The notes beneath the pieces were generated by a model. It was not told the DNA's origin and ran no database searches. It worked only from the letters and a program-made list of their open reading frames with translations. Below are positions 3,450-55,300 of a stretch of 64,000 nucleotides of DNA, piece by piece; within the stretch, counting starts at the first letter, position 1; each line of letters starts with the position of its first letter. The position numbers and the translations under genes are program-made. The stretch lies in sequence record MK250017.1; one strand, given 5' to 3'.

Positions 3450-4268
3450 TTAAATAATACATTTTTCACCACAATATGGGCAGAACTTAAATTTTGAATT
3501 AAGTTTTCTTCCACAATTAGTACAATATATTTTATTCAAATCACTTGTCGTATATGGTTTCCTTGATTTAGGAAGAATCTTTATATATTCTCTTTTAAAT
3601 GGATAATTTTCAAATTCATTATTTACTGTTTCAAATTTCTGATTTGAATAACCACCATTTTCAATTCTACCTGTTTCAATAGTAGTATCATTAACATTAG
3701 TTTTATATAAAGCTTTATTATATGTATTTCCATCAATACTTGCACAACAACAGTTAGTAACATTATTTGTTAATAAAACATTATTATTAGTATCTGAACA
3801 TGTAACTACAGTATCATAACTTGGAACAGTATATGTATTTTGATTAGAAATTAATGGACTCTCTTTCCATAAAACATTTAATGTATTATAAATATTTGTT
3901 TTAATTCTTGATGATACTCTTTCTTTATAAAACTTTACAGTAATATTACCATTATTCGCAATAGCATGTTTTACCTGTACATCATTATCATCTACTTCAT
4001 AAGTAGAAAATTTAAATTTAACCTGATTATCCAAATAACGTTCTAACCATACTCTCTCACCTGGTTTCAAAACTAACATACCATCTATATCTTTACCATT
4101 AAATGTAAATGTAACACCAATAGTAAACTGTTCAGAATTAAATAACTGAATTTCAAATTCATCATTATTGTCCATATAAACAACACGTGAATCTTCATTT
4201 GTAGAATACTCTTTCAAAAGAGATTTGTTAATAGCTAACTAAGCCATCTTCTTTTCATTAATAATCAT
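3450..4268 (-). CDS. C-terminal zinc-ribbon protein (272 aa, one TAG at codon 10)
   Basis: ATG 4268 MIINEKKMA-TAG-LAINKSLLKEY joins track ORF 3450-4217; C-terminal CTNCG...CPYCG. Confidence 0.75.
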
Positions 4269-4269
4269 A

Positions 4270-5003
4270 AGTCATATATAATTTATTTTAAACTTATCTA
4301 TTAAACTTTCAATTCTATACAAAATTTCAAAAGTACTTGAATAATACTCAGTCTAATAGAAATATCATTATCTAATTTTAATTATAATAGATATAAATTA
4401 AAAAATAATTTTTAATATCTATCTTTAACTTAATACTATATATTAATTATACTACAATATTTATAAAAAGTTTATATTTACTAATAAATTTTAAAAAATA
4501 ATTTAATAAATAAAAAATATTTACATTTCCGAAAGACTTACCTTACTAAATTCATTAAATTATTAAAAATTATAAATAAATTTTTTCATATATTTATATA
4601 TAGATCTATCACAANNNNNNNNNNNNNNNNNNNNNNNNNNNNTGAGTTCTGAGAAAAAGTCTACATTTTTTCTAAATATTTTTAATGAATTCTAAAAATA
4701 ATTCATAACTAATTAATATTCAATAAATTAAATAAAATATTTTTCATATAATTTTCATATAAATTAATATAAAATAAAAATTCAGATCTAAATTAATATA
4801 AATTTAAATCTGAATTAAAAATTAAATTTTTTATATACTATATATAATATCTATCTCAANNNNNNNNNNNNNNNNNNNNNNNNNNNNNNNNNNNNNNNNN
4901 NNNNNNNNNNNNNNNNNNNNTTATTTTTTAACTATTTTTAATGATATTTTTTTAAACTTTACAAATAATATCTAATATAACTATAGAAAATTAATTTAAT
5001 TTA
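4270..5003. other. very AT-rich non-coding divergence region with two N-gaps and a hairpin
   Basis: No credible ORF; lies between divergent genes; AATTCAGATCTAAATT / AATTTAAATCTGAATT near 4779-4816 pairs at 15 of 16 positions. Confidence 0.5.
4954..4981 (+). promoter_or_regulatory. putative middle-class promoter (AAAC-N18-TATAAC)
   Basis: AAACTTT 4954 and TATAAC 4976; same 22-nt offset as more than 10 other sites. Confidence 0.5.
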
Positions 5004-5543
5004 ATGGATATGGATTTTAATACTAAAGTATAGTTTACGAGAACACGTAATGTAAAGATGCCTAATAGAGCAAATAAGCATGATGCAGGTACAGATTTTT
5101 TTGTACCTTATTATAATTAGGAGTTTCTTGTTGATTTGATTAAGAAGAATACAGGTAATAAGATTTTCTATAAGATTGAGAATGATGATTTGTTTATCAC
5201 TATTCCGGCTGGTGAACAGGTAATGATTCCATCAGGAATTAAGGTATGGATTAATGATAAGAGAACATATCTTCAGGCAACTAATAAGTCTGGTGTTGCT
5301 TCAAAATATCATCTTGATGTTATGGCAAATACGATTGATGCAGATTATCAGGGAGAAGTTCATATTAATCTTTGTAACAATGGTAATACAGATATTACAG
5401 TTCAGACTGGTCAGAAACTTGTACAGTTTATTCATCAGATTTATCTTGATACTGATTGGGTTGAAATGGATGAGAAAGAATATGATGAGATTGAAGCATC
5501 AGACAGAGGTGATGGAATGGCAGGTTCTACCGGAACATTCTAA
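5004..5543 (+). CDS. dut: trimeric dUTPase (179 aa, TAG at codons 10 and 39)
   Basis: Read-through restores motif 1 (HDAGTDF); TNKSG, ANTIDADYQGEV, QKLVQF, RGDGMAGSTG follow. Confidence 0.92.
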
Positions 5544-5580
5544 AAAAATAAAATATATTTAAGAATATGAATTTAAGAAT

Positions 5581-10813: not shown

Positions 10814-12079
10814 ATGCCTATTATTTAGAAAACAAAGTATTCATATAATGATTTGACTATTGAGCCTGCAGTAATTAGTTCAATTAAGAGTAGGAAGGAA
10901 TGTGATCCATATGAGCGTATGGATGTAAATATGAGAGATTATCTTCCGTTGTTTACTGCACCAATGTCTACTATTGCAAATGAACATAATTTTAATATAT
11001 GGAAGAAGAATAAAATTATGCCTATGTTGCCACGAAATATTGGTGCTGATCCAAATGGAAGTATTGATAAACGAATTAGTTATATCAAAGATTTTCTTGA
11101 TAATGGTGATTGGGTTGCGTTGTCACTTAAGGAATTTGAATATGTTTTTGTAGAACATAAGATGATGAGTCCTGGACAAATCTTTCCTGGTTATAATCGA
11201 ACATATAGAGTATGTGTAGATTTGGCTAATGGTCATATGGAATGTCTATATGATACAATTAATAAAGCGAAGGAAATTGCAAGAAATGACAATTATAAAC
11301 TTATTGTAATGACAGGAAATATTGCAAATTCTGAAACATATAGATGGATTTGCAAACATGCTGAAGTTGATTATATTAGATTGTCTGTGGGAAGTGGATC
11401 AAATTGTATTACGGCTACGCAGACCTCTGTTCATTATCCTATTGCATCATTAATTGATGAATGTAAGTATATAAAGAATGTATACGAAGGTAAATCTTAT
11501 GCTAAATCAACACCTTATATTATTGCTGATGGTGGTGTTAGAGGATATGCAGATGTTATTAAGGCTATTGCTCTTGGTGCAGATTATGTAATGATTGGTA
11601 GTTTGTTTACAGGATTACTTGAATCTGCTGCACCTCTTGATATTGAGTGTTATAATTCACATTATAAGTATGGATATGCAGCAGGTATTATTAATGATGG
11701 TATTAATAATATTCTTAATCTTTGGGATAGTCTTGAAGATGAAGATGATAATGATACATTAGTACCAATTGATAATAAAGAATTGGAGCAGAAGAAGAAA
11801 GATTTCATTAAGGATATGAAAGATATTGTAAAGGAATCTTATGGTATGTCTACAAAGAAGGCTCAGAAGTTGATTAATCCAAATGCAAAGTCAAAGACTT
11901 CTGAAGGATGTACGAAGTATATTCATGTAAAGGAAACTGTTAAGCAGTGGTCAGATAATATGATAGATTATTTCAGGTCAGCAATGAGTTATACAAATAA
12001 GAAATATATTAATGATTTCAGAGGAAAAGTAGATCTGATTATTAATAGTTCATCTGCAATTCTTGCAGTAAATAAGTAA
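10814..12079 (+). CDS. IMP dehydrogenase / GMP reductase family enzyme (421 aa, TAG at codon 5)
   Basis: MPII-TAG-KTKYSYNDLTIEP restores the N-terminal YxDxxIxP motif; catalytic loop GSGSNCIT; IIADGG; ALGADYVMIGS; YGMST; SEG. Confidence 0.85.
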
Positions 12080-14477: not shown

Positions 14478-15443
14478 ATGAATAAAGATATACGTCCACC
14501 TCAGCATGTATTACATGTTTTCGATCCTAATAGAAAATGTAGACCACATGATGAAGTTGAGTTTATAGAAGGTCGTTATGTTGATATTGTAAATGCAAAG
14601 AATAAGGATCCACATACTTTGTATTTCGGTAAATCAAAGAATTCTGAACTCTTAACAGGTATTTTTTTAGGTGATCTTGAACTTACTTCAAAAGTAAAAG
14701 ATGTATCTCTTGTTTCTGTTGATGGTGTTGTAACATTATCTATTAAATATGTTAATTCTGCTGGTAAACTTGCAACAGTAAAAACAAATTTACCTTCATA
14801 GAAACTTGTTGAAGATATTAAAAAATTCTTAGAGGATTTTGATACAAGTATTCTTGATAAAATTAACACATCATTCAGTGATGTATATGATAGATTAAAT
14901 GTTATCGATTCATCAATAGTTGATATTAATAATCATCTTACAGTTATAGATACTTCTGTAGGTGAATTAACAACAAGAGTAGATACATTAGATACATCAT
15001 TATTAGGATTAATAGATGAACTTGATCATGGTAAGTATAATTATACAATACATGAAGATCCTGGAACATATGCAAACGGTTTCAAAAAAACATTTACTTT
15101 ATTTAAAGGTGAAGAAGAACAAAAAGATTCATCTAAGATTGAAGTAACTGATATGGTGTTGAAATAGTTAAATTATGTTAAAGATAATAATGTAATTGAA
15201 GCAAAAGTTTGGCCAGAACCTATTAAGTCAATCGATTTAATCGGTGATGTTCTTACATTAAAAGATGGTACAGTTATTAAAGATGTTATTTCATCTCTTG
15301 ATAAAGATTTAATTAAAACTGTATCATTAGACATGAAAGGTTATGACGAACATATTAATGACTTCATGAATACTGATTCATCTATTAATGACAGATTAAC
15401 TTTTGTAGAAAACCAATTGAAATGGGAAGAGTTAGATAAATAA
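14478..15443 (+). CDS. fibre-like structural protein, WEEL paralogue 1 (321 aa, 2 TAGs)
   Basis: Read-through of TAG 14799-14801; lD[TS]S[VIL] coiled-coil repeats; ends QLKWEELDK. Confidence 0.65.
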
Positions 15444-15487: not shown

Positions 15488-17062
15488 ATGAATAAAAATA
15501 TGGTTTATGGTGCTAATGAAGCAACTTCTTTAACTGATAAAGTTGCAGATTTTACAAAGGGTAAAAACATTCACTTTGGTTCTGGTGCATTTGAAGAATA
15601 GAAAGTTGTTGCTATTGCAACAGCAGCTGAATCTGATGCAAAGGTTCGTTTCGTATATGATGCAATAGGTGATTCTGGTATGGTATTTGTTGGTAATCAA
15701 CTTGCATCTTCTAAGATTCTTGACATTACAACAAATAAAGTAGCAAAGAAACATTTTGATCCTGAAACTGGTAATTATGTAGAATCAACTACAGAAAAAG
15801 TTGCAACTAAGGTAACAGTTACATGGTTTGGTTCTCAGGAAGATCCAAAAGATAATGTTGTAAAGACACAGACATGGACTACTGTATTTGATGTTATTGA
15901 TACAGATACAGTAAAAGCAATGATTGATAAAGCTTCAGCAGATTTAAATAAATCAGTTGATGATTTAAAAACAAAGCATGAAGCAGACGTTTTACGTTTA
16001 GATACATCAGTTAACGGCATTGAGACACTTCTTAAGCGCGATGTAGTTTCAGCTGACACTGGTAGTGCACTTACAGTAACTCCTACTTCTGCTGATGCAA
16101 CAGGTTATAAGACTTATAAGGTTGCAGTTAACGTAGATGATGCAAAAGGTTCAACTATTAAGGTTGTAGATAATAAGATTAAGATTGCAAAGTATGCAAT
16201 TAAGCAGGTTGCTGCGGATTCTATGGAAAAAGATGCAGATACTAATGAAACAAAGTATGCATCTGAATATCAGTTAATGATGACTGATGCTGATGGTGTT
16301 ACAAAGGCAGTTGGTGATAAGATTAACATTGCAAAAGACTTCTTAGTAACTAAGGCACATGTATGTACATTTAAGTATGTTGCTGAAAATGGCGCAGAAA
16401 TTAAGTATGATGTACAACTTGAAGATCAATGGGGTAATTCTCCAGCAGTTAAATATGGAGATGAAGTAACATCAGAAAATCAGCTTCCATGGTCTAAGAA
16501 TCAGGATGGTACATGGGAACAAGCACGTCTTGGTTTCGGTATTAAGTATGGTCATTCATATTTACACTTAGTTATCAATACTAAGCCAACTAATACAAAA
16601 GCTGCTAGACTTGATGATGTTTATCTTGATTTTACAGAAATCTTTACAACATTCAAGGGTGATGATAAATTCATCAAGGTTGAGAATGGCGTTGTTTCTT
16701 TGGATATTGATGCTGTTTCATCTAAAGTTGATGAAAAACTTAAGGTTAATGATACATTCACAGAACTTAAGGCAAAAGATGAAGCAATTGAAGGTCGTCT
16801 TAATGGATTAGATACATCTGTAAGCAATATTGAGAAATCATATGTAACAGATGCATCTCTTGAAGCGCCAAAGGCAGATAATGCACAGTTCAATACTTTA
16901 AAGATTACAAATCATAAAGTTGTTGATGGTGTTGCAAAAGACACAGAGGTTACTGTAGATGTTGCAAATGAAAAATATTATGCAGGATTAAATACAGCAT
17001 TAAATACACTTACAGAAAATGATAAACATCTTTCTGCACTTCTTACATGGGAAGAACTCTAA
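15488..17062 (+). CDS. fibre-like structural protein, WEEL paralogue 2 (524 aa, TAG at codon 38)
   Basis: ATG 15488 joins track ORF 15680; module ASSKILDITT; ends LLTWEEL. Confidence 0.7.
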
Positions 17063-30611: not shown

Positions 30612-31634
30612 ATGGACGTTACTAAAATAAAAACATATTTAGCAAGTAATAAAGTTTGTTTTGTTACAAATTCATTAGCAATGCCGAGTACGTTATTAGT
30701 TTCATCTCTAAAAACATATATAGAATATATTCCTATATAGAATTTCTGGTTAATTCCTGGTATAAGAGATAATAAACCATTTTATGGAATAGATGCATTT
30801 CTTTTAATGTTGAATTATTTCTTATCAAATAAGAATTTTGATTATGTTATCTATATAGATGAAGATTGTTTTATAACTGATTTTTATTCATTAGTAAATG
30901 AATTTATGAATTTTACAGAAAGTGGTTGTGTATTAGCAGGACCACAAGATGGTGGAGTTTTTTGTCATAGAAATCATAGTCGATTGATGATTAATACTTT
31001 CTTAAGTTTTTGGAATATAAAATTACTTAGAGATAAAAAAATAACATTTAATAATATTATTAATTATATTTCTAATGAATTTAAAAATAATTCCAATACT
31101 TTATATAAAGATTTTATACAGAAATTAATAATTAATAATGATAAATTATTATTTACGTATATGAATGAAAAATCAATGAATATGATAAACGATGTAAAAA
31201 CATTTCGTGAAAGTAGAGTTGATTTACCAAATCATGAAACACCTTATTGTAAAATAGTAAGAGATGATCCTAATAATAAGATAGAGCCTCATCAAATTCC
31301 ATATAGTTGGGATGATGATGTTGCAGAAATTAATTTTGAACCTTATTATATAATTGAACAAGCATTAGTAATATTATCTGATTCACCGATATATTATTTG
31401 TTTGGAACAGACTTATATGATTCAGATTATATAAAGAGAAATGTAACATTTGATACATCAGGATTAACATCTGCAATTTTTTCTTATAAACCAGATAATG
31501 AGTTTTATGATAGAAAATTGATTGCTGTTCATACATGGTTTAGCAGAGCATATACAAAATGGCCTCAAACAGAAGAACAGTTAAATCATACAAAACGAAT
31601 TAATTCAATTATTAAGAATTTTTCTAGAATTTAA
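30612..31634 (+). CDS. putative GT-A fold glycosyltransferase (340 aa, TAG at codon 43)
   Basis: ATG 30612 joins track ORF 30807; FDYVIYIDEDCFI DxD motif; preceded by AAACTTT 30557 / TAAAAT 30579. Confidence 0.55.
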
Positions 31635-35306: not shown

Positions 35307-36803
35307 ATGAATAATACGTATCTTGAAAACGTTATATTCNNNNNNNNNNNNNNNNNNNNNNNNCTTGTTTAGTCATTTAAAGGAAGTTATTTTACTAATC
35401 CTTATTTAAAAACTTTATTTGATATTATTAAACCACATATATTGGAATATAGAGCTGAACCAACTGAACAGCAATCTATAGATTTAGTAAAACTTGCAAA
35501 TAAAGAAGATAAGGTAACAGAAGATCAAATACATGCTTTATGGCAAACAAGAGATATGGTTAGCCAATATACAGATGAATGGTTAAATCAGAATACATAG
35601 GCATTTGGTGAATGGCAAAACCTTATGAGTGGTCTTAGACGTGTTATTGAATATGTAAAAACTATTCAAGCTGATGTTACATTTGAAAATTGTGCAGAGA
35701 TTGTTCAGCATGCGAAATCAATGTTTCAATCAGATACTAATTTTACATTGAACAATTCAAAAGGGCATGATTTCTTTGATCCTGTTAATCATAAGCAAAC
35801 TGAACTTGAAACTAGAAAGACTGGTTATAATTTTGTTGATCAGTGTTTGAAAGGTGGTTGGGCGAATAAAACATTAAATGTATTTATGGGTTCACCAAAA
35901 GTAGGTAAGTCTATGTGGCTTTGTAATTTATGTGCTAATTCTGTAAGAAATGGAGAGAATTCTGCATATATTACATTGGAGATGGCGTATCAGCTTGTTG
36001 CACAACGTATCGGTTCAAATCTTTTTAATATTCCTATCGAAGAATATGAAAAAAGTGCTGCAGATGCAAATTTTATGCAACAGAAGATGAAAGAATTTTA
36101 TATGAATTCACTTATCACGCCAGGTAAGTTTATCATAGAAGAATTCCCAACATCATCTGCAACTGTATATGATATAGAATCTTTCTTACTTAAATTAGAG
36201 GAAGAACTTTCTACTGAAGCAAAACCTTTTAAATTTAAGAACATTTTCATTGATTATGTTAATATCATGAAAGATGCGAAGAATCCTAATTCAGAAAGTA
36301 CATATTTAAAAATTAAATCTATTTGTGAAGATGTTCGTGCGATGGCACAAAGAAATAACTGGTGTGTTATTTCTTTAACTCAGACAAATAGAACTGCATA
36401 TGATTCAACTGATATTGGTATGAGTAATGTTTCTGAATCTGGTGGTTTGATTGCAACAGTTGATAGTTTATTCGGTATTATTCAATCTTCAATGATGCGT
36501 GTTGATAATACATATTATTTAAAAGCTGTTGCTATTCGAAATTCTGGACATATGGGAGATAAAAAGAAATTTGATTTTAATCCAACATATTTAAGAATTG
36601 AAGAAAATCTTGATGAAAATATTATTCCTGAAAATGTATCACTTGATGGTTTAGTAAAAGATAAACATAAGAATGATAATACAGGAAATAATAATTATCA
36701 GCAATATCCTATAAATGTTGGAGTTCGTCCAAATGTAATAGAATCACCTCAATTAGGATTAACAGAAACACAAATACAGGCACAAGATTTATTTAGCATG
36801 TAA
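35307..36803 (+). CDS. DnaB-family replicative helicase, T4 gp41-like (about 498 aa; spans N-gap; TAG at codons 22 and 98)
   Basis: Walker A GSPKVGKS, YITLEM, IFIDYVN, LTQTNR, VSESGGL; frame continuous from ATG 35307 across the 24 N. Confidence 0.88.
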
Positions 36804-36869: not shown

Positions 36870-37361
36870 ATGGCAAGAATTAATACTACAAAGATGCTTA
36901 GTAATGATGGGTATTTTTCAAGTAATGACTATAATCCTGATCTTTCTAATCAAACAATGACTGTATCACCTCTTGTGGCAGATTAGTATGACTACGCTAT
37001 GACTGATGATATAGTCTTGTTACATGAAAGAAAAGATACAGAAGAAATATTATATAACATATGGATTAATTCACCATATGCTAAACAATATGAGGTAAAT
37101 TCTTCTACTTTTGTCATACCAAAGATACCTAAAGAAGAAACAAGTAAAATCTTTTATTACATGAAAAATAAGCTTGCAGAAGTAAAAACGTTATCTGCAT
37201 ATGAAATGGTAATCGCTATAAATGAATTCTTTAATTTTAATTATGATTATGTGGTAAAGAAAGTATTATCACCTAAACTTAAAGCAGAGATATTAGCAGA
37301 TTATTATAACAATGGAATGAAGGAACGAATGGATACTAATGCATCTGTGAAATTATTTTAA
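36870..37361 (+). CDS. hypothetical protein (163 aa, TAG at codon 39)
   Basis: ATG 36870 joins track ORF 36999; AAACATT 36805 / TATAAT 36827 upstream. Confidence 0.7.
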
Positions 37362-37752: not shown

Positions 37753-39291
37753 ATGAGATTTATTAAGTCAAAGGAAAGCGAATTACATCCTAATTATGTA
37801 TCAAGAGTAATTCGTATTAAGGACGAGGATTTTTCTCCACACCCTCATCCAGATGTAACAAAGTTAAAGTGCTGCAGAATTGGTGGAGATACTATATATA
37901 ATGTTATTGTAAGTATAGATTCAAAACCTGGAAAGTATGTATTTTTCCCTGCAAGTACAAAGATCAATCCTGAATTTTTACGATATGCTAACTTATATCG
38001 TGATCCTGAAATGAATAGTAATCCAAATAAGACAGGATTTTTTGAAGAGAATGGTAGAGTAAAGTCACTTAAATTAAAAGCATCCTACGAAAAAACAGAT
38101 CCGTCAACCGGAGTAAAGGAAAATATATTTTTACCTAATGGAGTTTCAGATGGATTCTTGATTGAATTACAAGTTGTTCTAAATTTTATATTAGATACGT
38201 TTAATATAGAAGTAAATGAAAATGATATACCAGACAATACATGGTTTGATACTATTGAACATGAAGGGAAGGTTTGCTGGTTATCTAAGAAGTTTATTCC
38301 TAAAGTATTTACAGCAAAGAATAAAACTGGTGGTGATCAATCAAGATATAAGAGACGCTAGAAGAAATTAAAGAGGTTTAATAGAGTTATACCTGAACAG
38401 TTTAGATTTCATTATGATTCAACATTGGTAAAGAAGGTACCATTTGTTGTACAACCTACTGATTATATTCATATTTCGGGTAAAATGCATGGTTCATCGG
38501 TAATTTTTTCTTACGTTTTATGTAAGCAACAGTTAAATTGGAAGCAGAAAATTGCAAAGTATTTAACTGGTTATGAATTTAATAAGTATGATTACTTATA
38601 TGCATCTAGAACTGTTATTAAGAATCAATATATCATGAAAGAAGCAGGAAAAACCGGTAATGTTTATCATGTTGGTTTTTATGGATGTGATATATGGGGC
38701 GAAGCATTTAAAATTGTTAAACCACATCTTATTAAGGGAATGTCAGTTTATGCAGAAATTGTAGGATATACATCAACTAATAAGTATATACAAAAAGATT
38801 ATGACTATGAATGTGTTCCATTGAAGGATGGTGAAGATTATACATATGGAAAGCATTTTAAGATTTATGTATATCGTGTAACATTAACAAATGTCGATGG
38901 TGAAGTACATGAATTTTCACCAAGAGAAGTTCAAATATGGTGTAAGAATAATGATCTTATTGCAGTTCCAGAATATTATTATGGTAAAGCAAAAGATTTG
39001 TATCCAGACATTGATATAACAAATCATTGGCATGAAAATTTCTGGAATCGTATGGCATCTGATAAAAATTTCTATATGGAAATGGATTCACCTGATTGTA
39101 TAAATAAGGTTCCACATGAAGGTGTTGTTATTAAGATAGATGATATGATTCCTCGCGCATTCAAATTAAAGAGTTACCGCTTTTGCAATAAGGAAGAGAA
39201 AGAGTTAGATGCTGGTATAACAAATATTGAAGATGCACAATCTGAAAATATTGATAATGATGATTCAAATAGTTATATTGATGAACAATAA
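37753..39291 (+). CDS. RNA ligase, Rnl2/DRB0094-like with N-terminal accessory domain (512 aa, TAG at codon 203)
   Basis: Motif I SGKMHGSS, YASR, motif III YAEIVG, IIIa FKIYVYRV, IV HEGVVIK, V FKLKS; track ORFs joined across TAG 38359. Confidence 0.85.
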
Positions 39292-39358: not shown

Positions 39359-39366
39359 TATCTTTG
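39359..39366 (+). promoter_or_regulatory. Bacteroidota-type -7 element TATCTTTG
   Basis: GTGTATCTTTG upstream of ATG 39400. Confidence 0.65.
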
Positions 39367-39991: not shown

Positions 39992-39998
39992 AAATAGA

Positions 39999-43555: not shown

Positions 43556-43560
43556 ATAGT

Positions 43561-44058: not shown

Positions 44059-44499
44059 ATGTCAAAAAATAAATTTATTAAGCTTCATTCAAAAGAAGAT
44101 AATAGTGTTATTATTGCAAGAATTTCAAAGATTAGTCTTGTAACTACAGATAATGATTATTCTGGTAAAATGACAACTGTATATTTTGATGATGAAAATA
44201 TTGATTCAATTACAGTTAATGAAACACCAGAGAAGATTTATCAAAATATTGTAGAGTTGGATAATACAGATTTTTTGAAACTTCATTCAAGTGATGATAA
44301 TGCAGTTATGATTGTAAACACAGAGATTATTTCTGTTATTTCACAATCAGAAGAGGATGGAAAGAATGTAACTACAATGTATTTCAATAATGAATCTATT
44401 GAATCAGCTTCATTTAATGAATCTCCTGAACGTATTTATAAGATGATGGAGATTACTAATAATGATGTGGTTACATCAGATAATAATGAAACTAAGTAA
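44059..44499 (+). CDS. protein with two tandem ~65-aa repeats, FlbD-like (146 aa)
   Basis: FIKLHSKEDN...TTVYFDDENIDSITVNETPEKIY repeated as FLKLHSSDDN...TTMYFNNESIESASFNESPERIY. Confidence 0.65.
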   Translation: MSKNKFIKLHSKEDNSVIIARISKISLVTTDNDYSGKMTTVYFDDENIDSITVNETPEKIYQNIVELDNTDFLKLHSSDDNAVMIVNTEIISVISQSEEDGKNVTTMYFNNESIESASFNESPERIYKMMEITNNDVVTSDNNETK

Positions 44500-45083
44500 T
44501 TATAGTTAAAGATATACGTTTATAAAAAATAGTAGTATAACTGAATCTATAGGCTAAACCAATATGTTTTTATAAACATTCCCTTTATTAGATAAGTAGC
44601 AAATATATTAATAATGAGAATATAGCTATGAATGTATATATGTTTACAATTATAAATAGAATAATTTAGATATAATATAGTAAAAATTATAAATAAAGTA
44701 ACATATATATTTCTAATAATTTTTATGAATCTAATAAAAACATGAATTAGATACTATTTATTAGTTACTTCAGTTTATTATGAAGGTATTATTGAAACTT
44801 TAATTTAATAGTACGATGATATTATACCCTCGAAAGTTAATTTGAAGATTGTGAAATAATATATTGGAATTGAAAATGATAAGAATATTATTTATAAAGA
44901 ATATTACATTGTAATATTTAATATCGATATTATAATTTGAAAATGATACGAAAATATATTATGGATCAGTTGGATGATTAATGAGTACAGAATGTCCCTG
45001 TATTGTGGGAGGTTATTTTAAAGTGGAGATTTTATTGGAATTTTAAATTTTGAATAATTATTAAAAACATACTATTAATTTTT

Positions 45084-45117
45084 AAAGGATATAACCCTAA
45101 AGGTTATATCCTTTTTT
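45084..45117 (+). terminator. intrinsic terminator-like hairpin
   Basis: AAAGGATATAACC / GGTTATATCCTTT followed by T-run. Confidence 0.75.
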
Positions 45118-45132
45118 ATTTAAAAATAAGTT

Positions 45133-45160
45133 AAACAATTAACATATATTTGAGTATAAT
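45133..45160 (+). promoter_or_regulatory. putative middle-class promoter
   Basis: AAACAAT 45133 and TATAAT 45155. Confidence 0.6.
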
Positions 45161-45188
45161 AATTAAACAAAAATTGATTTTTTTAAAT

Positions 45189-47228
45189 ATGCAAAAAGGT
45201 AATATTGGAGTTACTAGTTAGGATATTTTTCCATTAATCAAGAAATTTATGTATAATGATCAGGATATTTTTATCCGTGAGATCGTAAGTAATGCAGTTG
45301 ACGCATCAGAGAAGTTAATTAAAGTTATTAGTGCAAATGAGTATACAGCAAATCCAGATGATTTAAAAGTTACAGTTACTATTAATCATGAAGATAATAC
45401 TATTACTGTTTCTGATATGGGTATTGGTATGACTGCTGATGAAATAGAAAAGTACATTAATCAGATTGCATTTTCAGGAGCAAATGACTTCTTAGAGAAA
45501 TATAAGGATACACAGATTATTGGTCATTTTGGACTTGGATTTTATTCAAGCTTTATGGTAAGTTCAAAAGTTGAAATTGTATCAAAGTCATATAAAGAGA
45601 ATTCAAAAGCATGTAGATGGACATGTGAAGGAACTACAGAGTTTACACTTAAGGATGATGATAAAGAATCTGTAGGTACCGATGTAATTATGCATATTTC
45701 TGATGAATATAAGGAGTATGTAAATGAAAGTAAACTTATGGAACTTTTAAAGAAGTACGCAGAATATTTACCTATTCAAATTTATCTTAAAGATGTTCCT
45801 GCACCAACTACTGATTCATCTACCGGTGAAGTTACATATCCAGAATCACATGAAACAAAAATTACACGAGATGAACCATTGTGGTTAAAATCTGCATCAG
45901 AACTTAAAGATGAAGATTATATTAAGTTCTATAAGGAAACATTCCCTAATAGACCTGAACCACTTTTCTGGATTCATATTAATATTGATACACCGTTTAC
46001 ATTTAAGGGAATTCTTTATTTCCCTGCATTTGATCAGAAACATCCTATTTTTGAGCGTAAGCATCTTAATTTGTATTGTAATCGTGTATTTGTGACAGAT
46101 GATGTAGATGGAGTATTACCAGATTATTTGAGTCTTCTTCATGGTGTAATTGACTCTCCTGATATTCCATTGAATGTTTCTCGTTCAGTTCTTCAAAATG
46201 ATGCTAATGTTAAGAAGATTAGTTCACATATTACAAATAAGGTTATGAGTTCACTTCGTACACTTATGAAGAAAGATAGAGAAACATATGAGAAAAAGTG
46301 GGAAACAATTAAAACCTTCATTAATCTAGGCGTTGTAACAGAACCTAATATTTTTGATAAAGCAAAGGATATTATTCTTCTTGTTGATACTGATAATAAG
46401 ATGTATACTTTTGATGAATATTATGATAAAGTATCAGAAACACAGAAAGATAAAGATGGTAAAATTGTATATTTGTATACATATGATACTGCTACACAAT
46501 ATACTTATATCGATGCTTTAAAGAAATACGGTTATAATATTCTGCTGTTTAATAGTCAATATGGAGCATTTGAAGTACATACATTTGAAATGAAATTACA
46601 AGAAAAGAATGTAACATTTAAACGTATTGATGCAGATGTACCAGAAAACCTTATTAAGAAAGAAGAAGATACAACAAAGAAAGAAAAACCTGTATCTGAG
46701 AATATCAAGAGTATGTTGGTATCTATGTTTGATTGTATTGAGCTAAATCTTCCTAAAATTACACATCAGTATATTGTTCAGCAAGATGGTAAAGATGCAC
46801 TGCCTATTACTATTGTTGCAGATGAGTTCTTCCGTCGTATGAAGGAAATGTCAATGCTTAATAATGCTGGTATGTATTTGGAAAATAATGCATCTATTAA
46901 GATTATTATTAATGCAGATTCTAAAGTTGTAAAGAAGATTATTAAGATTGCAGAAAAAGAAATTGGTCAGCAAATTAATGATATTAATGAAAAAGTTAAA
47001 GATATTAATACAAGATTGGAAGCTGCTGATACAGATGATGCAAAGAATTCTATTAAAAAAGAACTTGATAACATTATTGCAGAGAAAAAGGAAATTATTA
47101 ATAAACATGCACATGCAGATAGTCATATTCATGAATTAATTGATATTGGTTTGTTACAGTATGGTTTATTATCAGGTGAAGATTTGGCAGCATTTGTTAA
47201 GAGATCTATAAAGATGATTGAAAAGTAA
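45189..47228 (+). CDS. htpG: Hsp90 chaperone HtpG, Bacteroidota type (679 aa, single TAG at codon 11)
   Basis: MQKGNIGVTS-TAG-DIFPLIKKFMY...REIVSNAVDA; DMGIGM; GHFGLGFYS; IDSPDIPLNVSRS. Confidence 0.95.
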
Positions 47229-47353
47229 TTCAATATATAAAAGAGAGTATGTTTTGTAAATAACTACTCTCTTTTTACTTTTTACAAAAGTAGACAAATA
47301 ATAAATATTAATATATAAGAAATATATTAACAAATTAAAATTAAATTAACAAA

Positions 47354-47614
47354 ATGTATCGGTATCATAATCCCTTAAAGAATTTTAATCCATTTGTGAT
47401 AACAAGTGTATTTGTATTATTTTTAATTGTAATGTTTACATTTGCAATTCCTACATTGATAAATGCAGCATCTACAATGATGAATTTTGTTGCCATTATT
47501 TTTATTTTATTTACAATTTATATATGTATTATTGTAATGAGATATTATAATGATTATTATATACGACATTATCAGAAATACAAGGAAGAAAGAGAAAAGA
47601 AAATTAAAGATTAA
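47354..47614 (+). CDS. two-TM membrane protein (86 aa)
   Basis: Two hydrophobic helices and basic tail. Confidence 0.65.
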   Translation: MYRYHNPLKNFNPFVITSVFVLFLIVMFTFAIPTLINAASTMMNFVAIIFILFTIYICIIVMRYYNDYYIRHYQKYKEEREKKIKD

Positions 47615-47639
47615 TTTATCATTTTAATTATTAAATTAT

Positions 47640-49672
47640 ATGAAGAAAATCGTATTGAATTTGATTGTCATACTAATGACATGTATGAGTTTTGTATCTT
47701 GTGCTTATGAGAGAGTTGATGCAGGATGTGAAGGTATTTATGTAAATCTTTATGGTGACGATAAAGGTGTAGGTGAAGTTAGTCTATGTACAGGGGCCGT
47801 GTGGTATTGTGTATAAATATTTCTAATAAATATATAAATAATCAAGAATAAAAATGAATTAGTAGATTTTAGATTTATTTGTAAACAAAGAATATACTGT
47901 ATAGAAAATATCAAAATATTTAAAAATAGATATAGAAATTGTTAGAAATACGTTATTGTTAAATTATTATCCTACTTTATATAGAACAAGAAAAGAAACA
48001 TTACGTATGCATGATGCAATGCTATGTTATATTAATAGTGATAGAAGTTTATTAAATATTGCTAAAGAATATAATATGGGTGATGATAATTTAGCAAAAA
48101 ATTTAAGATTATGTGGTGTAACTATTGAGGATCGTTAGCATAAACCAAAATTTAATGAAAATATATTTGATATTATTGATACAGAAGAAAAAGCGTACTG
48201 GTTAGGCTTTATATTTGCTGATGGTTATATTGAAACACCAAAACCAAATATGAAATATACATTTGAAATATGTTTATCATGTAAAGATAAACATCATTTA
48301 GAAAAATTTAATATTTTTATGTAGCATAAAAATATGAATATAAAAGTTTATACACATTTGGATAAAATAGCAAATAAAGAACGTACAAATGCTAGATGGA
48401 TTGTTGCAAATAAACATTTGTGGAATACATTAAATAATTTAGGATGTACACCTCAAAAATCATTAACATTAAAATTTCCTAATATAAAAGAAGAATTAAA
48501 ACGTCATTTTATAAGAGGATATATAGATGGTGATGGCACAATAGGATATTATGGAAAATATAATACTGTTCATTGTGAATGTATAGGAACATATGATATT
48601 TTATATAATATGTTTACATCATTAAATTTTATACCTAGAATATTTAATAAACCAAAGCGTTATAAAAAAGAAACAATGTTTTTTACAATGTCTGGTTCCA
48701 AAGCGAAAGAATTTATTAATTATATTTATAAAGATTGTAATATATATTTAGACCGAAAATATTAGAAATATATAGAAATATGCCGTCTATAATAGGAATA
48801 TTATAGATTATTAATGACCAATATCGGGGAAGTGCTGAGATGCGAATCCCGAGATAAGTTATAATTTTAAAAGATTTTAACCATCGTACAGCGTAGAAAT
48901 TGAACCTATATTATAATATAGAATAAAATATTTCCAAGAGTGGTCATCATCCCAACTGAAATAAGTGGATGAATAGGTACGCGGAACTACCCAAATATGA
49001 AGGGATAGAAATACGAATAAAAAGTCGTATGATAACAAAATTGATTGCCCCTTGACTCATGATGTATTTGAATATCCTACATATATTCAGACTGTAGATT
49101 ATCCATCATTTGAAGTTAATAGTAAAGACGGTACAAAATTTACTGTTGATCCTGCAGTTCTCGTAAAAATAGAAGATGGTAAATCACCACTTATTTTTAA
49201 AAAGTATAGAAAGCAGCTTGATGAAATTGTAAAGAATACTTTATATGTTTATATCAGAGATGCAGCACGTATTGAATTTAATAAGTATACAGCAGACCAG
49301 ATTGTATCAAATCGTGAAGCAGTAGATAAATCATTTGAGGAACGTGTAAGAAAAGGATTTGCAAGTGAACATTTTATTCTTCAGCAATTAACGCCAGGTA
49401 TTGGTTATCCTAAATCATATGAAGAAGCTATTAATGCTAAGAATAAAGCAATTCAAGATGAAATGCGTGTCAGCAATGAGATTCGTGTAGCTGAGGCAGA
49501 AGCAAAGAAAAAACTTGTTCTTGCAGAAGCAGAAGCGAAGGCAAACAAATTGAAAGAACAATCACTTACACCATTGCTTATTCAGAAAATGGCAATTGAA
49601 AAGTGGTCAGGAAATTTGCCAGATACATATGTAGGTAGTCATGGTATTCCTAATTTGATTTTAGGAAAGTAA
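47640..49672 (+). CDS. SPFH/Band 7/prohibitin family lipoprotein, join(47640..47805,49044..49672), 264 aa
   Basis: Exon 1 lipobox FVSC then ERVDAGCEGIYVNLYG; spliced junction GAVWYCPLTHDVFEYP; exon 2 AARIEFNKYT, GIGYP, EAEAKKK, AIEKWSG; 795 nt keeps frame. Confidence 0.85.
47806..49043 (+). mobile_element. group I intron (1238 nt) with LAGLIDADG ORF
   Basis: Exon ends in U, intron ends in G; P3 ATGACCA 48814 / TGGTCAT 48941; P4 TCGGG / CCCGA; P7 CAGCGTA 48889 / TACGCG 48978 with bulged A; P8 CATCC/GGATG; GNRA-capped P2. Confidence 0.88.
47854..48792 (+). CDS. intron-encoded double-motif LAGLIDADG endonuclease (312 aa, 6 TAGs)
   Basis: AYWLGFIFADGYI and HFIRGYIDGDGTI; exact TATAAATA at 47833-47840 upstream. 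Confidence 0.88.
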
Positions 49673-52225: not shown

Positions 52226-52255
52226 AATATTTAAGTGCTAATAAAGTTTATTGCA

Positions 52256-52283
52256 AAACTTTATTAGCATTTTTTTGTATAAT
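52256..52283 (+). promoter_or_regulatory. putative middle-class promoter
   Basis: AAACTTT 52256 and TATAAT 52278 upstream of nrdD. Confidence 0.6.
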
Positions 52284-52361
52284 AATTAATTAATATTTTG
52301 ATATTTCATAGTATCAAAGAATAAATAAAATACCTAAAATAAAATAGAAAGAAAACTAAAT

Positions 52362-55300
52362 ATGAAGGTAACAAAACGTGATGGTAGTTTTGAGAATTAT
52401 AGTGTTTAGACAGTTAAACGTGCAGTTAGAGAAGCGTTTAAGTCAACAAAGACTAAATACTCAAAAGACACAATTTCGAATATTGTAAGTTCTATTACGC
52501 CATATGATGGCATTCCTGTAGAAGAAATACAGGATCAGATAGAAACAAGTTTGTATTCTCATGATCAGCCTAAAGTTGCAAAAGAATTTATTCTTTATCG
52601 CAATAAGAAGAAGGAAATCAGAGAATGGGTTGCTAATAAAGAAGCATTTATTGAAAGATATAAAAATGCATCAAATACTGCAAATAGTACAATTGATGAT
52701 AATTCTAACGTATCATCTAAGAACATCGGTGTATTAAATGCAGAAATTCATAAAGGTGATAATATTCTTGTAAGTAGAGGAATGATTACAAGAAAGTTAA
52801 AAGATTTATTCCCTGATTTTAAAGCAAAACAATATCAAAAAGATTTAAAAAATCATATTATCTATAAGAATGATGAATCAAGTTTTGCTGGTGCTATAAG
52901 TCCTTATTGTGTTAGTGTATCTATGTATCCATTTCTTAATCATGGATTGGAAAAGATTGGAGGTTTATCATGCCATCCACAAAATCTTGATTCCTATTGT
53001 GGTATGTATGTAAATCTTGTATTTGCAGTTGCAGCACAATTTGCAGGAGCAGTAGCAACATCAGAATTCTTGGTATATTTTGATTATTTTGCACGAAAGG
53101 AATTTGGAGATGATTACTATTTGCATAGTAAAGAATTCTATAAGATTGGTCCAAAATATCGTAAGTTACTTAATGAATCTAATTACTGGTGTAAAGATGT
53201 AGATACACTTAGAAAACATGATTTTGGTACAGATGAATTAAATAAATTGAGAGATGAACTTGTTTATAATTCAGAACGACCATTATCTGATGAAGAACTT
53301 AAAGAATATGAAACAGAACTTTCTAAATATGATGTAGAAGGTTCAATAAAAGATTTTACAAATCCTATTAAGATTGGTGATGGTACAAGAACTATTGGTT
53401 CATGTATACAACAATTCTTCCAACAAGTAGTGTATTCAATTAACCAACCCGCGGCAAGTCGTGGTCTGCAATCTGCATTTGTAAATTTCTCTTATTTTGA
53501 TAAGCCTTTCTTTGAAGGTATGTTTGGGGAATTTGTATTTCCAGATGAAGAAGGTACAAGACCTTGTTGGGAAAGTGTTTCATGGTTGCAGAAAGATTTT
53601 ATGATTTGGTTTAATAAAGAGCGCCTTCGTACTATAATCACTTTCCCTGTTGAAAGTTTTGCATTGGTATATAAGGATGGAAAGTTTGTAGATGAAGATT
53701 CTGCAGATTTTGTTGCAGAAGAATATTCTCGTGGTCATTCATTCTTTACTTATATGTCAGATACTGTTGATTCATTATCAAGCTGCTGTTTCGATGGTGA
53801 TACACCATTTATGTTTGTAGAACCTCTTAATATGGAAGAGCATGGTGGTAATAATGCATATATGGTTTCAACTATTAAAGATGCATATGAAAAATATAAA
53901 GATGATATAATTAATGTATATCATATGAATTTTAATGGTACTACAGGTAAATGTACAGGTGAATGGGTAAATGCAAAATTTGTAAAAGCACAAGCTATTC
54001 AGGAAGTACGAATTTATTTTAAACCAGATGATTTCAATCCAGATGAGTCAAGGAATGTAATGAGAGTTACGCCGGATCATATATTCCCTGTTATTGATGA
54101 TAATGGATTTATTACAGATAAAAATGCATATTTGTTACAGACTGGAGATCAACTTATTTTTGAATATGCACAATATATGGGATTATTTAGAGATGAATTC
54201 CCTGATAGAGATCAAGATTTAGTAAAACGTGCTATTTCAAAAGTTGAAATTGTAAATCTTGATGAACCAAAGGATTATTATTGTGTAGAGTTATGTGATA
54301 AAAATATTGAACCATACTTTTTGTTACCTAATGGAAATATTACACATAACTGTCGCCTTAAGAATAAGATTCAAACAAAGGAATTTAATTTTACAAATGG
54401 TAACTTAGGGATCAACTTGGGTCCTTTATGTGCTTAATTGCTAATCAAGCAATGTATTAATATAGCGATATTAATGCATCGGTGAAGCCTAAACATAAGT
54501 TGTGAAACTATATGCATGGTAATACCGAACCAAGTTAATAAATATGTTATAATTTTACATTTATAATATATGAATAATAAAATATTTACAATTTACAAAA
54601 TATCATTTCCAAATGGAAAAGTATATATTGGTTAGACATATCATTATCATTAGAGAATTAAAGAACATTTAAATGAAATGAAACATAGTGATTATAAATT
54701 ATATAGAGCTATGAGGAAATATAATATAAATGAAAATAATTTTTCTATAGTAGAAGAAAATATTTTAACATAGAACGATGCAGATAATAAAGAAATATAT
54801 TATATCAATTTATATGATAGTTATAATAATGGATATAATTCTACATTAGGTGGACATGCTGCAACAATAACAAAAATAGGAGAAGAACATCCTAAAGCTA
54901 TATTAAATGATAATGAATTATTAGAATTAAGAAAAATTAGATATTCTATGAAATATACATTTGGAGAAGTATATGATATGTATAAAAATAAAATGTCAAA
55001 AAGTGGTTTTTCAAAATATTGGCATTATTATACAAGACCTGAAATCGGAGAAGAATATAATACTGATGAAGTAAATAAATTTTATAAATCTGATAGGAGA
55101 ACAAGAAGAGGTATATTACATGCAAATTCAAGAAATTTATCAGATGAAGAAGTTTTAAATATAAGAATACGATATTTTGTAAATGGTGAAAAAGAAGATG
55201 ATATTTTTAAAAAATATAAACACTTATATTCAAAGAGTGGTTTTAATAAAATATTATTTGGATAGTCATATATGCATGTAAAAATGCCTATTAAAACAGA

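What the first reader, a model, noticed from the sequence alone, without database searches (positions are those of the whole stretch)
4268..52409. Lone TAG codons cluster at the 5' ends of otherwise TAG-free genes
Seen: single TAGs lie at codon 5 of 421 (GMPR/IMPDH), 10 of 272, 11 of 679 (HtpG), 16 of 985 (NrdD), 38 of 524, 39 of 163 and 43 of 340; dUTPase has codons 10 and 39, helicase 22 and 98. The RNA ligase (203 of 512) is the exception. Many genes have none (pol pieces, clamp, S1, OmpA, PepO, TelA, CNNM, Thg1), while structural and endonuclease genes carry up to 18 scattered TAGs. Known: recoded stops are enriched in late and lysis genes. Inference: a 5' TAG could be a cheap gate that aborts translation after a few residues until the phage decoding machinery is on. 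Relaxed constraint at N-termini is an alternative explanation.
Basis: partly seen in the sequence, partly recalled or inferred. Interest (0 to 1): 0.8.

Follow-up and report, generated by a model that had tools for sequence, protein, structure and literature searches.

The report
Lone amber codons hug gene starts
In the giant gut phage Lak-A1, which reads the stop codon TAG as glutamine, genes that otherwise avoid TAG keep their few TAGs within about the first 30-50 codons, a real genome-wide pattern best explained by early aborted translation being cheap rather than by a proven purpose-built switch.

Summary
The window is Prevotella phage Lak-A1 (MK250015.1, 404664-468663), a TAG=Gln (code 15) megaphage.

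**The clustering is real.**
- In the window, 16 TAGs in 12 TAG-poor genes have a mean relative position of 0.20 against 0.51 expected from Gln-codon positions (p<5e-5).
- It replicates in the rest of Lak-A1, in Lak-B1, in genes with orthologue-verified starts, and in the unrelated code-15 phage phAss-1. It does not replicate in two crAss-like Burzaoviruses.
- TAG is by far the most 5'-enriched codon in TAG-poor genes (8-fold; the next codon is 2.3-fold).
- Segments upstream of the TAGs evolve as coding sequence, so mis-called starts do not explain it.

**Best explanation: position-dependent selection.**
- TAG density falls smoothly with codon position, roughly as 1/x, and the shift is also present more weakly in TAG-rich genes.
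- TAG use falls with expression-linked codon bias. The major capsid gene is the extreme case and keeps one conserved TAG at codon 11.
- 5' TAGs evolve like ordinary Gln codons, whereas body TAGs in TAG-poor genes are lost faster.
- Genes behind a host-type promoter motif have essentially no TAG.

This favours position-dependent purifying selection on a risky codon under AT mutation pressure. A selected "cheap gate" is not excluded, because some genes re-acquire 5' TAGs at new codons, but it is not required.

The parts
4239..4241 (-). TAG, codon 10 of the 272-codon Zn-ribbon protein gene (3450-4268)
   Evidence: The Lak-B1 orthologue has AAG at this site.
5031..5033 (+). TAG, codon 10 of dUTPase (5004-5543). 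A second TAG is at codon 39 (5118-5120).
   Evidence: Both TAGs are kept in Lak-B1 at codons 8 and 37. The AAACTTTA motif lies at -50.
10826..10828 (+). TAG, codon 5 of the IMPDH/GMPR-family gene (10814-12079)
   Evidence: Lak-B1 has AAA here and its orthologue is TAG-free.
15599..15601 (+). TAG, codon 38 of a 524-codon gene with strong codon bias (15488-17062) behind an ATAAATA motif
   Evidence: Lak-B1 has TAGs at codons 18 and 157 instead.
30738..30740 (+). TAG, codon 43 of a 340-codon gene (30612-31634)
   Evidence: Lak-B1 has a TAG at codon 13 instead. The AAACTTTA motif lies at -55.
35370..35372 (+). TAG, nominal codon 22 of the DnaB-like helicase (35307-36803). A second TAG is at nominal codon 98 (35598-35600). 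The codon numbers assume the N run 35340-35363 is in frame.
   Evidence: The Lak-B1 orthologue has TAGs at codons 22 and 104. The masked letters were not read.
36984..36986 (+). TAG, codon 39 of a 163-codon gene (36870-37361)
   Evidence: Lak-B1 has TAGs at codons 7 and 39.
38359..38361 (+). TAG, codon 203 of the RNA ligase (37753-39291). This is the exception in the window.
   Evidence: The Lak-B1 orthologue has its only TAG at codon 3.
45219..45221 (+). TAG, codon 11 of HtpG (45189-47228)
   Evidence: The TAG is conserved at the same codon in Lak-B1.
52407..52409 (+). TAG, codon 16 of NrdD, inside the ATP-cone domain (52362-54437; C-terminal part at 55758-56546)
   Evidence: Pfam ATP-cone covers residues 1-85. 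The TAG aligns with a genuine Gln in the solved NrdD 8p23. It is TAG in Lak-B1 as well. The ATAAATA motif lies at -41.
59801..62842 (-). Contrast case: a 1013-codon gene with 18 scattered TAGs and weak codon bias
39359..39366 (+). Example of the host-type upstream motif TATCTTTG, which heads a run of TAG-free genes (39400-44499)

Best explanation
TAG in Lak phages is a glutamine codon read by a phage tRNA(CUA) in a host that reads TAG as stop, so each TAG risks premature release. AT-biased mutation, mainly CAG to TAG, keeps supplying TAGs. Selection removes them with a strength that depends on three things:
1. **Timing.** Whether the gene must be translated before the suppressor is available. 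Genes behind the host-type TATCTTTG motif tolerate none.
2. **Expression.** How strongly the gene is selected for efficient translation. TAG use falls along the main codon-bias axis, and the major capsid gene is the extreme.
3. **Position.** How far into the gene the codon lies. An abort at codon 10 wastes almost nothing and leaves no truncated protein, whereas an abort at codon 300 wastes a long and possibly harmful chain.

In genes under strong selection, only TAGs in roughly the first 30-50 codons survive, and these appear as lone 5' TAGs.

- **Shown:** the pattern itself, its gradient, its links to codon bias and promoter motif, and the turnover rates.
- **Inferred:** leaky decoding and competition with RF1, cost as the selective agent, and the temporal meaning of the motifs.

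Such genes do become suppressor-dependent at little cost, but that looks like a by-product rather than a selected gate.
For: 1. **Within-gene permutation against CAA/CAG positions**.
   - Lak-A1, 1-2-TAG genes: mean relative position 0.328 against 0.500, with 29 TAGs within 20 codons against 9.1 expected (0 of 5000 permutations as extreme).
   - Lak-B1: mean relative position 0.315, with 33 against 13.6 expected.
   - Lak-A1 outside the window gives the same result.
2. **TAG is the outlier codon.** It is 8.4-fold (p=5e-15) and 7.9-fold (p=1e-15) enriched in codons 2-30 of 0-2-TAG genes. The next codon is 2.3-fold.
3. **Graded decline.** In genes of 300 or more codons with 0-2 TAGs, density is 14.1, 8.9, 3.8, 1.9 and 0.76 per 1000 codons for codons 2-10, 11-20, 21-30, 31-50 and 51-100. 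Genes with 3 or more TAGs also shift 5' (0.461 against 0.489).
4. **Not a start-calling artefact.**
   - Pre-TAG segments have 54% of their A1/B1 differences at third codon positions, against 31% in true upstream DNA (p=2e-4).
   - The clustering holds in 227 gene pairs with aligned ATG starts.
   - NrdD's TAG aligns to a Gln inside the ATP-cone.
5. **Turnover.** 5' TAGs stay TAG in 55% and 51% of cases, much like CAA. TAGs beyond codon 50 in TAG-poor genes stay TAG in only 23% and 18% (Fisher p=0.008 and 0.003).
6. **Codon bias.** The TAG share in gene bodies falls with codon-bias PC1, computed without Gln codons: rho -0.55 (p=2e-20), and -0.54 within late-motif genes. The Gp23-family capsid gene has the top PC1 and TAGs only at codon 11 (both clades) and codon 381 (A1 only). 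5'-TAG genes have the PC1 of TAG-free genes, not of TAG-rich ones.
7. **Host-type motif genes.** TATCTTTG-motif genes carry 1 TAG among 41-44 genes and none in the first 30 codons.
8. **Mutation direction.** TAG differences between Lak-B1 and Lak-B8 mostly involve CAG, with gains outnumbering losses 10 to 4.
9. **An unrelated phage.** The same clustering appears in the unrelated phage phAss-1: 11 TAGs within 30 codons against 4.5 expected, p=0.0008.
Against: - No measurement of termination or read-through exists for any Lak phage, so leaky decoding is assumed.
- A TAG-rich 1013-codon gene with 18 TAGs implies that read-through per codon must be very efficient late in infection, which makes the per-TAG cost small.
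- The interaction between codon bias and position is significant in Lak-A1 (p=0.001) but not in Lak-B1 (p=0.10).
- Gene-level recurrence of 5' TAGs at new codons (5 of 13 against a 7% base rate) is what a selected gate predicts. The cost model explains it only by gene-to-gene differences in tolerance.
- Two crAss-like code-15 phages show no 5' clustering, though each has few TAG-poor genes that carry a TAG (12-17).
- Only 3 young TAG differences fell in TAG-poor genes, too few to test the selective filter directly.
- Gene calls and starts come from my own ORF caller, not from curated annotation.
Confidence: 0.55

Rival explanations
1. Selected cheap gate. A single TAG is kept near the start of certain middle or late genes so that they cannot be translated until the phage tRNA(CUA) is active. 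The 5' position is chosen because it minimises waste.
For: - No 5'-TAG gene has the host-type motif directly upstream (0 of 43 and 0 of 54). The AAACTTTA motif class is enriched for lone 5' TAGs: 7 of 16 genes in Lak-A1 and 4 of 14 in Lak-B1.
- Same-site conservation is seen in 14-17 genes, including HtpG, NrdD, dUTPase and the capsid gene.
- Genes that lost the site often carry another 5' TAG in the sister clade: 5 of 13 and 5 of 18, against base rates of 7% and 4% (p=0.002). Examples are the 524-codon gene (38 to 18), the 340-codon gene (43 to 13) and the RNA ligase (203 to 3).
- The tRNA(CUA) genes sit in a TAG-free gene run.
Against: - 5' TAG frequency never exceeds the level seen in TAG-rich genes.
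- Retention equals that of CAA.
- 7-10 orthologues of 5'-TAG genes are entirely TAG-free.
- 10-15 long genes behind the late motif have no TAG.
- The positional decline is smooth and also occurs in genes that already have many TAGs, where an extra gate is pointless.
- The base after the TAG is the same for 5' TAGs and other TAGs.
Confidence: 0.27
2. Relaxed amino-acid constraint at N-termini alone. TAGs arise from AAG, GAG or CAG at variable sites, and such sites happen to be more common near the start.
For: Where the orthologue lacks the TAG, the codon is often GAA, AAG or AAA rather than a Gln codon. The sites are therefore not strictly Gln-constrained.
Against: - CAA and CAG show no 5' enrichment (0.95-fold).
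- The first 20 codons are barely less conserved than gene bodies (0.70 against 0.73), and pre-TAG segments are more conserved (0.80).
- The effect depends on gene class and codon bias, which amino-acid constraint does not predict.
Confidence: 0.06
3. General 5' ramp of rare or slow codons. TAG is simply one more rare codon favoured or tolerated in the first few tens of codons.
For: A few other rare codons (TCC, ACG, AGT) are mildly 5'-enriched, 1.6-2.3-fold.
Against: TAG's enrichment is about four times larger than that of any other codon in both genomes. The enrichment is tied to TAG-poor genes specifically.
Confidence: 0.07
4. Artefact of ORF calling. Starts were placed too far upstream, so non-coding in-frame TAGs are counted as early codons. 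A variant is re-initiation at a start just downstream of the TAG.
For: In AT-rich DNA an upstream ATG...TAG ahead of the true start is expected in a few percent of genes. Some very early TAGs (codons 2-5) may be of this kind. phAss-1 starts were not verified.
Against: - Pre-TAG segments evolve as coding sequence, and true upstream DNA does not.
- The result holds for orthologue-verified starts.
- NrdD's TAG lies inside the ATP-cone domain. HtpG's TAG (codon 11) lies just upstream of the best solved-structure alignments, which begin at residues 8-14 of the protein.
- There is no excess of downstream ATGs after 5' TAGs.
Confidence: 0.05

Closest known systems
Stop-codon recoding in Lak and other gut phages (code 15; Devoto et al., bioRxiv 10.1101/356790; Borges et al., bioRxiv 10.1101/2021.08.26.457843)
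   Same: This is the same phage and the same code. TAG is concentrated in structural, lysis and endonuclease genes and is absent from large blocks. Suppressor tRNA(CUA) and a release-factor gene are present elsewhere in the genome.
   Different: Those papers describe which genes and blocks carry TAG. In the texts I searched, none describes where TAG sits within a gene. The 5' gradient and the class of 'TAG-avoiding genes with one early TAG' are additional.
Selection against nonsense (processivity) errors that grows along a gene, producing intragenic codon-usage gradients (Eyre-Walker 1996; Gilchrist and co-workers; cited from my own knowledge)
   Same: A risky codon is tolerated early and purged late, and more strongly in highly expressed genes. 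The observed roughly 1/x decline and the link to codon bias fit this logic.
   Different: In that literature the effect is a few percent in ordinary codon bias. Here it is a 20-35-fold density difference for one codon whose failure mode is literal termination by a release factor.
5' translational ramp and rare-codon enrichment at gene starts (Tuller 2010; Goodman 2013; cited from my own knowledge)
   Same: It is a positional codon bias confined to the first few tens of codons.
   Different: Other rare codons in Lak show at most 2.3-fold enrichment against 8-fold for TAG. The effect also depends on gene class.
Block-wise dual coding in crAss-like phages (Yutin 2021, PMC7886860; Mgcod preprint 10.1101/2022.06.29.495998)
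   Same: Early genes are TAG-free and late genes are TAG-rich.
   Different: In the two Burzaovirus genomes tested, TAG-poor genes show no 5' clustering. Several TAG-poor genes there have their only TAG as the last or second-to-last codon before TAA/TGA, as if TAG still served as their stop.

Membership tests
Code-15 (TAG=Gln) Lak megaphage | Sequence identity to a Lak genome | tested here: met
   100% identity over 24 kb to MK250015.1 at 440663-464663.
Code-15 (TAG=Gln) Lak megaphage | In-frame TAGs inside conserved genes, aligned to Gln | tested here: met
   NrdD's TAG at codon 16 aligns to Gln in the solved NrdD 8p23. Between clades, TAG most often exchanges with CAA or CAG. Coding density is 0.885 with TAG read as sense.
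Code-15 (TAG=Gln) Lak megaphage | Phage-encoded tRNA(CUA) and a release-factor gene | tested here: met
   There are two tRNA(CUA) genes at Lak-A1 225329-225401 and 226234-226308, and none in the window. An RF-1-domain gene lies at 368736-369086; RF1 versus RF2 was not resolved here. Lak-B1 has no detectable tRNA(CUA).
Recoding as a regulator of late and lysis genes (Borges model) | TAG-rich structural and lysis genes, TAG-free early genes | tested here: met
   The tail-lysozyme-domain gene has 4 TAGs and the 1013-codon gene has 18. 58 of 78 TAG-rich genes have ATAAATA upstream. 44 TATCTTTG-motif genes are TAG-free, with one exception.
Recoding as a regulator of late and lysis genes (Borges model) | Demonstrated temporal switch of decoding during infection | not testable with these tools
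   There is no cultured Lak system. The promoter-motif classes are only a proxy for timing.
Position-dependent selection against nonsense errors | Frequency of the risky codon declines with distance from the start | tested here: met
Position-dependent selection against nonsense errors | Effect is stronger in highly expressed genes | tested here: inconclusive
   The TAG share falls strongly with codon-bias PC1 (rho -0.55 and -0.50). The PC1-by-position interaction is significant in Lak-A1 (p=0.001) but not in Lak-B1 (p=0.10). Expression was not measured.
Position-dependent selection against nonsense errors | The codon actually causes premature termination at a measurable rate | not testable with these tools
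   This needs ribosome profiling or reporter assays.
Programmed regulatory stop codon (selected gate) | Conservation of the TAG above synonymous expectation | tested here: not met
   5' TAG retention is 51-55%, against 40-60% for CAA.
Programmed regulatory stop codon (selected gate) | Presence conserved at gene level, with losses compensated | tested here: inconclusive
   5 of 13 and 5 of 18 losses are compensated, against base rates of 7% and 4% (p=0.002). However, 7 and 10 orthologues are TAG-free.
5' rare-codon ramp | Rare codons in general are enriched at the 5' end to a similar degree | tested here: not met
   The next-best codon is 2.3-fold enriched, against 8.4-fold for TAG.

The most novel reading that the evidence does not exclude
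Lone 5' TAGs are a selected, minimal-cost translational checkpoint. They tie highly expressed middle and late genes (capsid, NrdD, HtpG, ClpX-like, helicase, dUTPase) to the availability of the phage suppressor tRNA. Their positions turn over between clades while their presence is maintained.
Probability: 0.25. Interest if true: 0.8.

Novelty: new variant of a known kind. Interest (0 to 1): 0.6.

Why it matters
Stop-codon recoding in phages has so far been described gene by gene or block by block. A steep within-gene gradient is indirect in-vivo evidence that reading the reassigned TAG still carries a risk of termination, and that this risk shapes phage genomes down to codon position.

- It defines a third class of genes, beside TAG-free and TAG-rich: TAG-avoiding genes with one early TAG. 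The class includes the major capsid gene.
- It gives a quantitative prediction, that cost scales with position and with expression. This can be tested with reporters.
- It separates two ideas that are usually merged: "TAG regulates late genes" and "TAG accumulates wherever it is cheap".
- It has a practical use for annotation. A gene whose only TAG is at codon 5-40 will be silently truncated or mis-started by standard-code gene callers.

Tried and rejected
**Tools and data that were unavailable or gave nothing.**
- No whole genome was held for the window. I rebuilt Lak-A1 from the public record around the window, keeping the window's N runs unfilled.
- More distant Lak clades were not found in the phage collection or in IMG/VR using HtpG; only A-, B- and C-type genomes turned up.
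- PHROGs gave nothing for the 524-, 571-, 340- and 163-codon proteins.
- Rfam found no family in the window.

**Analyses that led nowhere or were rejected.**
- My first permutation script timed out.
- Re-initiation downstream of 5' TAGs is rejected: there is no excess of nearby in-frame ATGs.
- A TAG-specific preference for the following base is not robust. The excess of A after TAG is shared with CAG in Lak-B1.
- A TAG-containing upstream motif (TATAGAA) that could have produced spurious in-frame TAGs is not enriched upstream of genes.
- Comparing young and old TAGs in Lak-B1 against Lak-B8 gave only 3 events in TAG-poor genes, all beyond codon 180. That is the expected direction, but the test has no power.
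- Generality is partial: phAss-1 shows the clustering, and the crAss-like phages cr7_1 and cr124_1 do not.

Full report
**Identity and setting**

The window matches Prevotella phage Lak-A1 (MK250015.1) at 100% identity, with window position 1 at record position 404664. Lak phages read TAG as glutamine (bioRxiv 10.1101/356790). G+C is about 26%.

The window has no tRNA gene. Elsewhere the Lak-A1 genome has two tRNA(CUA) genes and an RF-1-domain gene.

No whole genome was held for the window. I therefore assembled the rest of Lak-A1 from the public record around the window, leaving the window's three N runs as they are. I also fetched Lak-B1 (about 83% nucleotide identity), Lak-B8, phAss-1 and two crAss-like phages. 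Genes were called with my own ORF caller under TAG=Gln. Lak-A1 gave 539 genes: 331 TAG-free, 68 with 1-2 TAGs and 140 with 3 or more.

**The N runs**

- The runs at 4615-4642 and 4860-4920 lie between the divergently oriented Zn-ribbon gene and dUTPase. In-frame stops 1 and 3 codons upstream of the two starts keep both ORFs clear of them.
- The run at 35340-35363 lies inside the helicase ORF as read from the ATG at 35307. The helicase codon numbers 22 and 98 therefore hold only if the gap is in frame.
- The uninterrupted Lak-B1 orthologue has an aligned TAG at codon 22, which fits an in-frame gap. I did not read or fill the masked letters.
- Excluding the helicase leaves the window statistics unchanged.

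**Checking the observation**

Three corrections apply:
- NrdD is split into a 691-codon ORF and a second ORF at 55758-56546, with a GIY-YIG ORF between them.
- Two further 2-TAG genes were omitted: 14478-15443 and 17165-18880.
- The helicase numbering carries the caveat above.

In the window, the 12 genes with 1-2 TAGs hold 16 TAGs. Their mean relative position is 0.20 against 0.51 expected when TAGs are shuffled among each gene's own TAG, CAA and CAG positions. Ten lie within 50 codons against 2.6 expected.

**Replication**

| Data set | Result |
|---|---|
| Lak-A1 outside the window | 31 TAGs within 30 codons against 11.8 expected |
| Lak-A1, all 1-2-TAG genes | mean relative position 0.328 against 0.500 |
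| Lak-B1 | mean relative position 0.315; 60 within 50 codons against 32.4 expected |
| Genes with 3 or more TAGs | weaker but significant 5' shift (0.461 against 0.489) |

Among all codons, TAG is the outlier. It is 8.4-fold and 7.9-fold enriched in codons 2-30 of TAG-poor genes, while the next codon is 2.3-fold and CAA and CAG are at 0.95.

**Is it an artefact of start calling?**

This was the main worry. In AT-rich DNA, an upstream ATG followed by a non-coding in-frame TAG is expected in a few percent of genes. Four results argue against it:
1. Segments between the called start and the TAG carry 54% of their A1/B1 differences at third codon positions and are 80% identical in protein. True upstream DNA shows 31% (binomial p=2e-4).
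2. In 227 orthologue pairs with aligned ATG starts and gap-free first 50 codons, the clustering persists: 12 against 5.0 expected in Lak-A1 and 19 against 6.4 in Lak-B1, within 30 codons.
3. NrdD's TAG lies inside the ATP-cone domain and aligns with a genuine Gln of a solved NrdD. The best HtpG alignments to solved structures begin at residues 8-14, so its TAG at codon 11 sits at the edge of the conserved region.
4. No TAG-bearing promoter motif is enriched upstream of genes.

**Shape of the pattern**

In genes of 300 or more codons with 0-2 TAGs, TAG density falls steadily with position:

| Codons | TAG per 1000 codons (Lak-A1) |
|---|---|
| 2-10 | 14.1 |
| 11-20 | 8.9 |
| 21-30 | 3.8 |
| 31-50 | 1.9 |
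| beyond 50 | about 0.4-0.8 |

This is roughly a 1/x decline. The TAG share of Gln-type codons in the first 10 codons (0.29 in A1, 0.19 in B1) stays below the share in TAG-rich genes (0.50-0.55). There is also a small excess in the last tenth of genes.

**Evolution between clades**

| Codon class in TAG-poor genes | Retained A1 to B1 | Retained B1 to A1 |
|---|---|---|
| TAG within 50 codons | 55% | 51% |
| CAA | 60% | 40-49% |
| TAG beyond codon 50 | 23% | 18% |

The difference between 5' and body TAGs is significant (p=0.008 and 0.003). So 5' TAGs behave like ordinary Gln codons, while body TAGs in these genes are short-lived.

- Where the TAG is absent from the orthologue, the codon there is often GAA, AAG or AAA.
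- Between Lak-B1 and Lak-B8, TAG differences mostly involve CAG, and gains outnumber losses 10 to 4. This fits AT-biased mutational input. Only three events fell in TAG-poor genes, all beyond codon 180.

**Which genes carry lone 5' TAGs**

Three upstream motifs sort the genes.

| Motif | Position | Association |
|---|---|---|
| TATCTTTG | -60 to -30 | Matches the Bacteroidetes TAnnTTTG promoter element (my knowledge). Precedes 41-44 genes with one TAG in total and none in their first 30 codons. |
| ATAAATA | -45 to -15 | Resembles the T4 late promoter (my knowledge). Precedes 58 of 78 TAG-rich genes. |
| AAACTTTA | about -60 to -15 | Enriched before lone-5'-TAG genes (7 of 29 against 1 of 78 TAG-rich genes). 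In the window these are dUTPase, the helicase and the 340-codon gene. |

No 5'-TAG gene has the host-type motif directly upstream.

Codon bias gives the second sorting:
- The main axis of synonymous codon usage, computed without Gln codons, predicts the TAG share in gene bodies: rho -0.55, and -0.54 within the late-motif class.
- The Gp23-family major capsid gene sits at the extreme of that axis. Its only TAGs are at codon 11 (conserved in both clades) and at codon 381 in Lak-A1 only.
- Lone-5'-TAG genes have the codon bias of TAG-free genes, not of TAG-rich ones.
- Genome-wide they include a PolB piece, a ClpX-like ATPase, a 5'-3' exonuclease and phosphoesterases.

**Interpretation**

The simplest reading is mutation pressure toward TAG, opposed by selection against a codon that can still be read as stop. 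That selection is:
- absolute in genes expressed before the suppressor is available;
- graded by translational selection in the remaining genes;
- graded by position, because an early abort is cheap.

This accounts for five features of the data: the gradient, its presence in TAG-rich genes, the link to codon bias, the neutral-like turnover of 5' TAGs, and the faster loss of body TAGs. Leaky decoding is inferred and has not been measured.

The gate idea shares the same physics and adds selection for the presence of a TAG.

Against it:
- TAG frequency at 5' ends stays below the level in TAG-rich genes.
- Retention is not above the synonymous level.
- 7-10 orthologues of 5'-TAG genes are TAG-free, including the GMPR-family gene in Lak-B1.
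- 10-15 long late-motif genes have no TAG.

For it:
- Genes that lost one 5' TAG carry another within 50 codons in the sister clade five to seven times more often than the base rate.
- In the window these are the 524-codon gene and the 340-codon gene. The RNA ligase shows a similar shift, from codon 203 in Lak-A1 to codon 3 in Lak-B1.

I cannot separate a selected gate from gene-specific tolerance with two clades.

**Generality and prior work**

- phAss-1, an unrelated code-15 phage with 44% G+C, shows the clustering: 11 TAGs within 30 codons against 4.5 expected, p=0.0008. Its starts were not verified.
- Two crAss-like Burzaovirus genomes do not show it. In several of their TAG-poor genes the only TAG is the last or second-to-last codon before TAA/TGA, which suggests TAG still acts as a stop there.
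- The papers I could search on Lak and recoded phages describe gene-level and block-level TAG use, and none mentions position within genes. That is not proof that it has never been reported.

**Verdict**

- The finding is a new variant of two known things: phage stop-codon recoding and position-dependent selection against nonsense errors.

Noticed in passing
window 6164, 8966, 9361, 39359 (TATCTTTG); 4954, 30557, 35254 (AAACTTTA); 12146, 14447, 15455, 52321, 54538 (ATAAATA): There are three upstream motif classes with sharp positional peaks before start codons. They sort genes into TAG-free, lone-5'-TAG and TAG-rich sets in both Lak-A1 and Lak-B1. They are probably early (host-type), middle and late promoters. 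I did not see this described in the papers I read.
   Followed up: partly
Lak-A1 record 290204-290276 (L014); Lak-B1 344976-345048: A conserved tRNA with anticodon UUA, which would read TAA, is present in both clades even though TAA is the main stop codon.
   Followed up: no
Lak-B1 whole record (L026-L053); Lak-B8 415017-415089: Lak-B1 has about 1360 in-frame TAGs but no tRNA(CUA) detectable by ARAGORN or by blastn. The homologue of the Lak-A1 tRNA(CUA) is found only in B2, B4, B5, B7 and B8.
   Followed up: partly
Lak-A1 record 225329-226308 (L011): The two tRNA(CUA) genes flank a 256-codon ORF with 8 TAGs, inside an otherwise TAG-free run of genes on the minus strand.
   Followed up: no
window 52362-56546: NrdD is split. 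An N-terminal ORF with a weak intein-like tail is followed by a TAG-rich GIY-YIG endonuclease ORF (54570-55469) and then the NrdD C-terminal ORF (55758-56546). Rfam finds no group I intron at the gathering threshold.
   Followed up: partly
window 21415-24644: A PolB piece ends in the N-terminal half of an intein splicing domain (21415-22221). The C-terminal half of the splicing domain opens the ORF at 23670-24644. Between them lie a 372-codon ORF with 4 TAGs (phrog_22677) and an 80-codon ORF.
   Followed up: no
window 44500-45188: A 690-base gene-free stretch lies upstream of HtpG. It ends in a hairpin plus T-run that looks like a terminator, about 30-55 bases before the start. It may be one of the highly expressed intergenic regions reported for Lak.
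   Followed up: no
Lak-A1 record 46850-48838 (L001), minus strand: The Gp23-family major capsid gene has the strongest codon bias in the genome. It carries a TAG at codon 11 that is conserved in Lak-B1.
   Followed up: yes
NC_055895.1 and NC_055899.1 (L068-L079): In these crAss-like code-15 phages, several genes with no other TAG have one as the last or second-to-last codon before TAA/TGA, for example dUTPase at codon 184 of 185. This looks like TAG serving as a stop with a back-up stop.
   Followed up: partly
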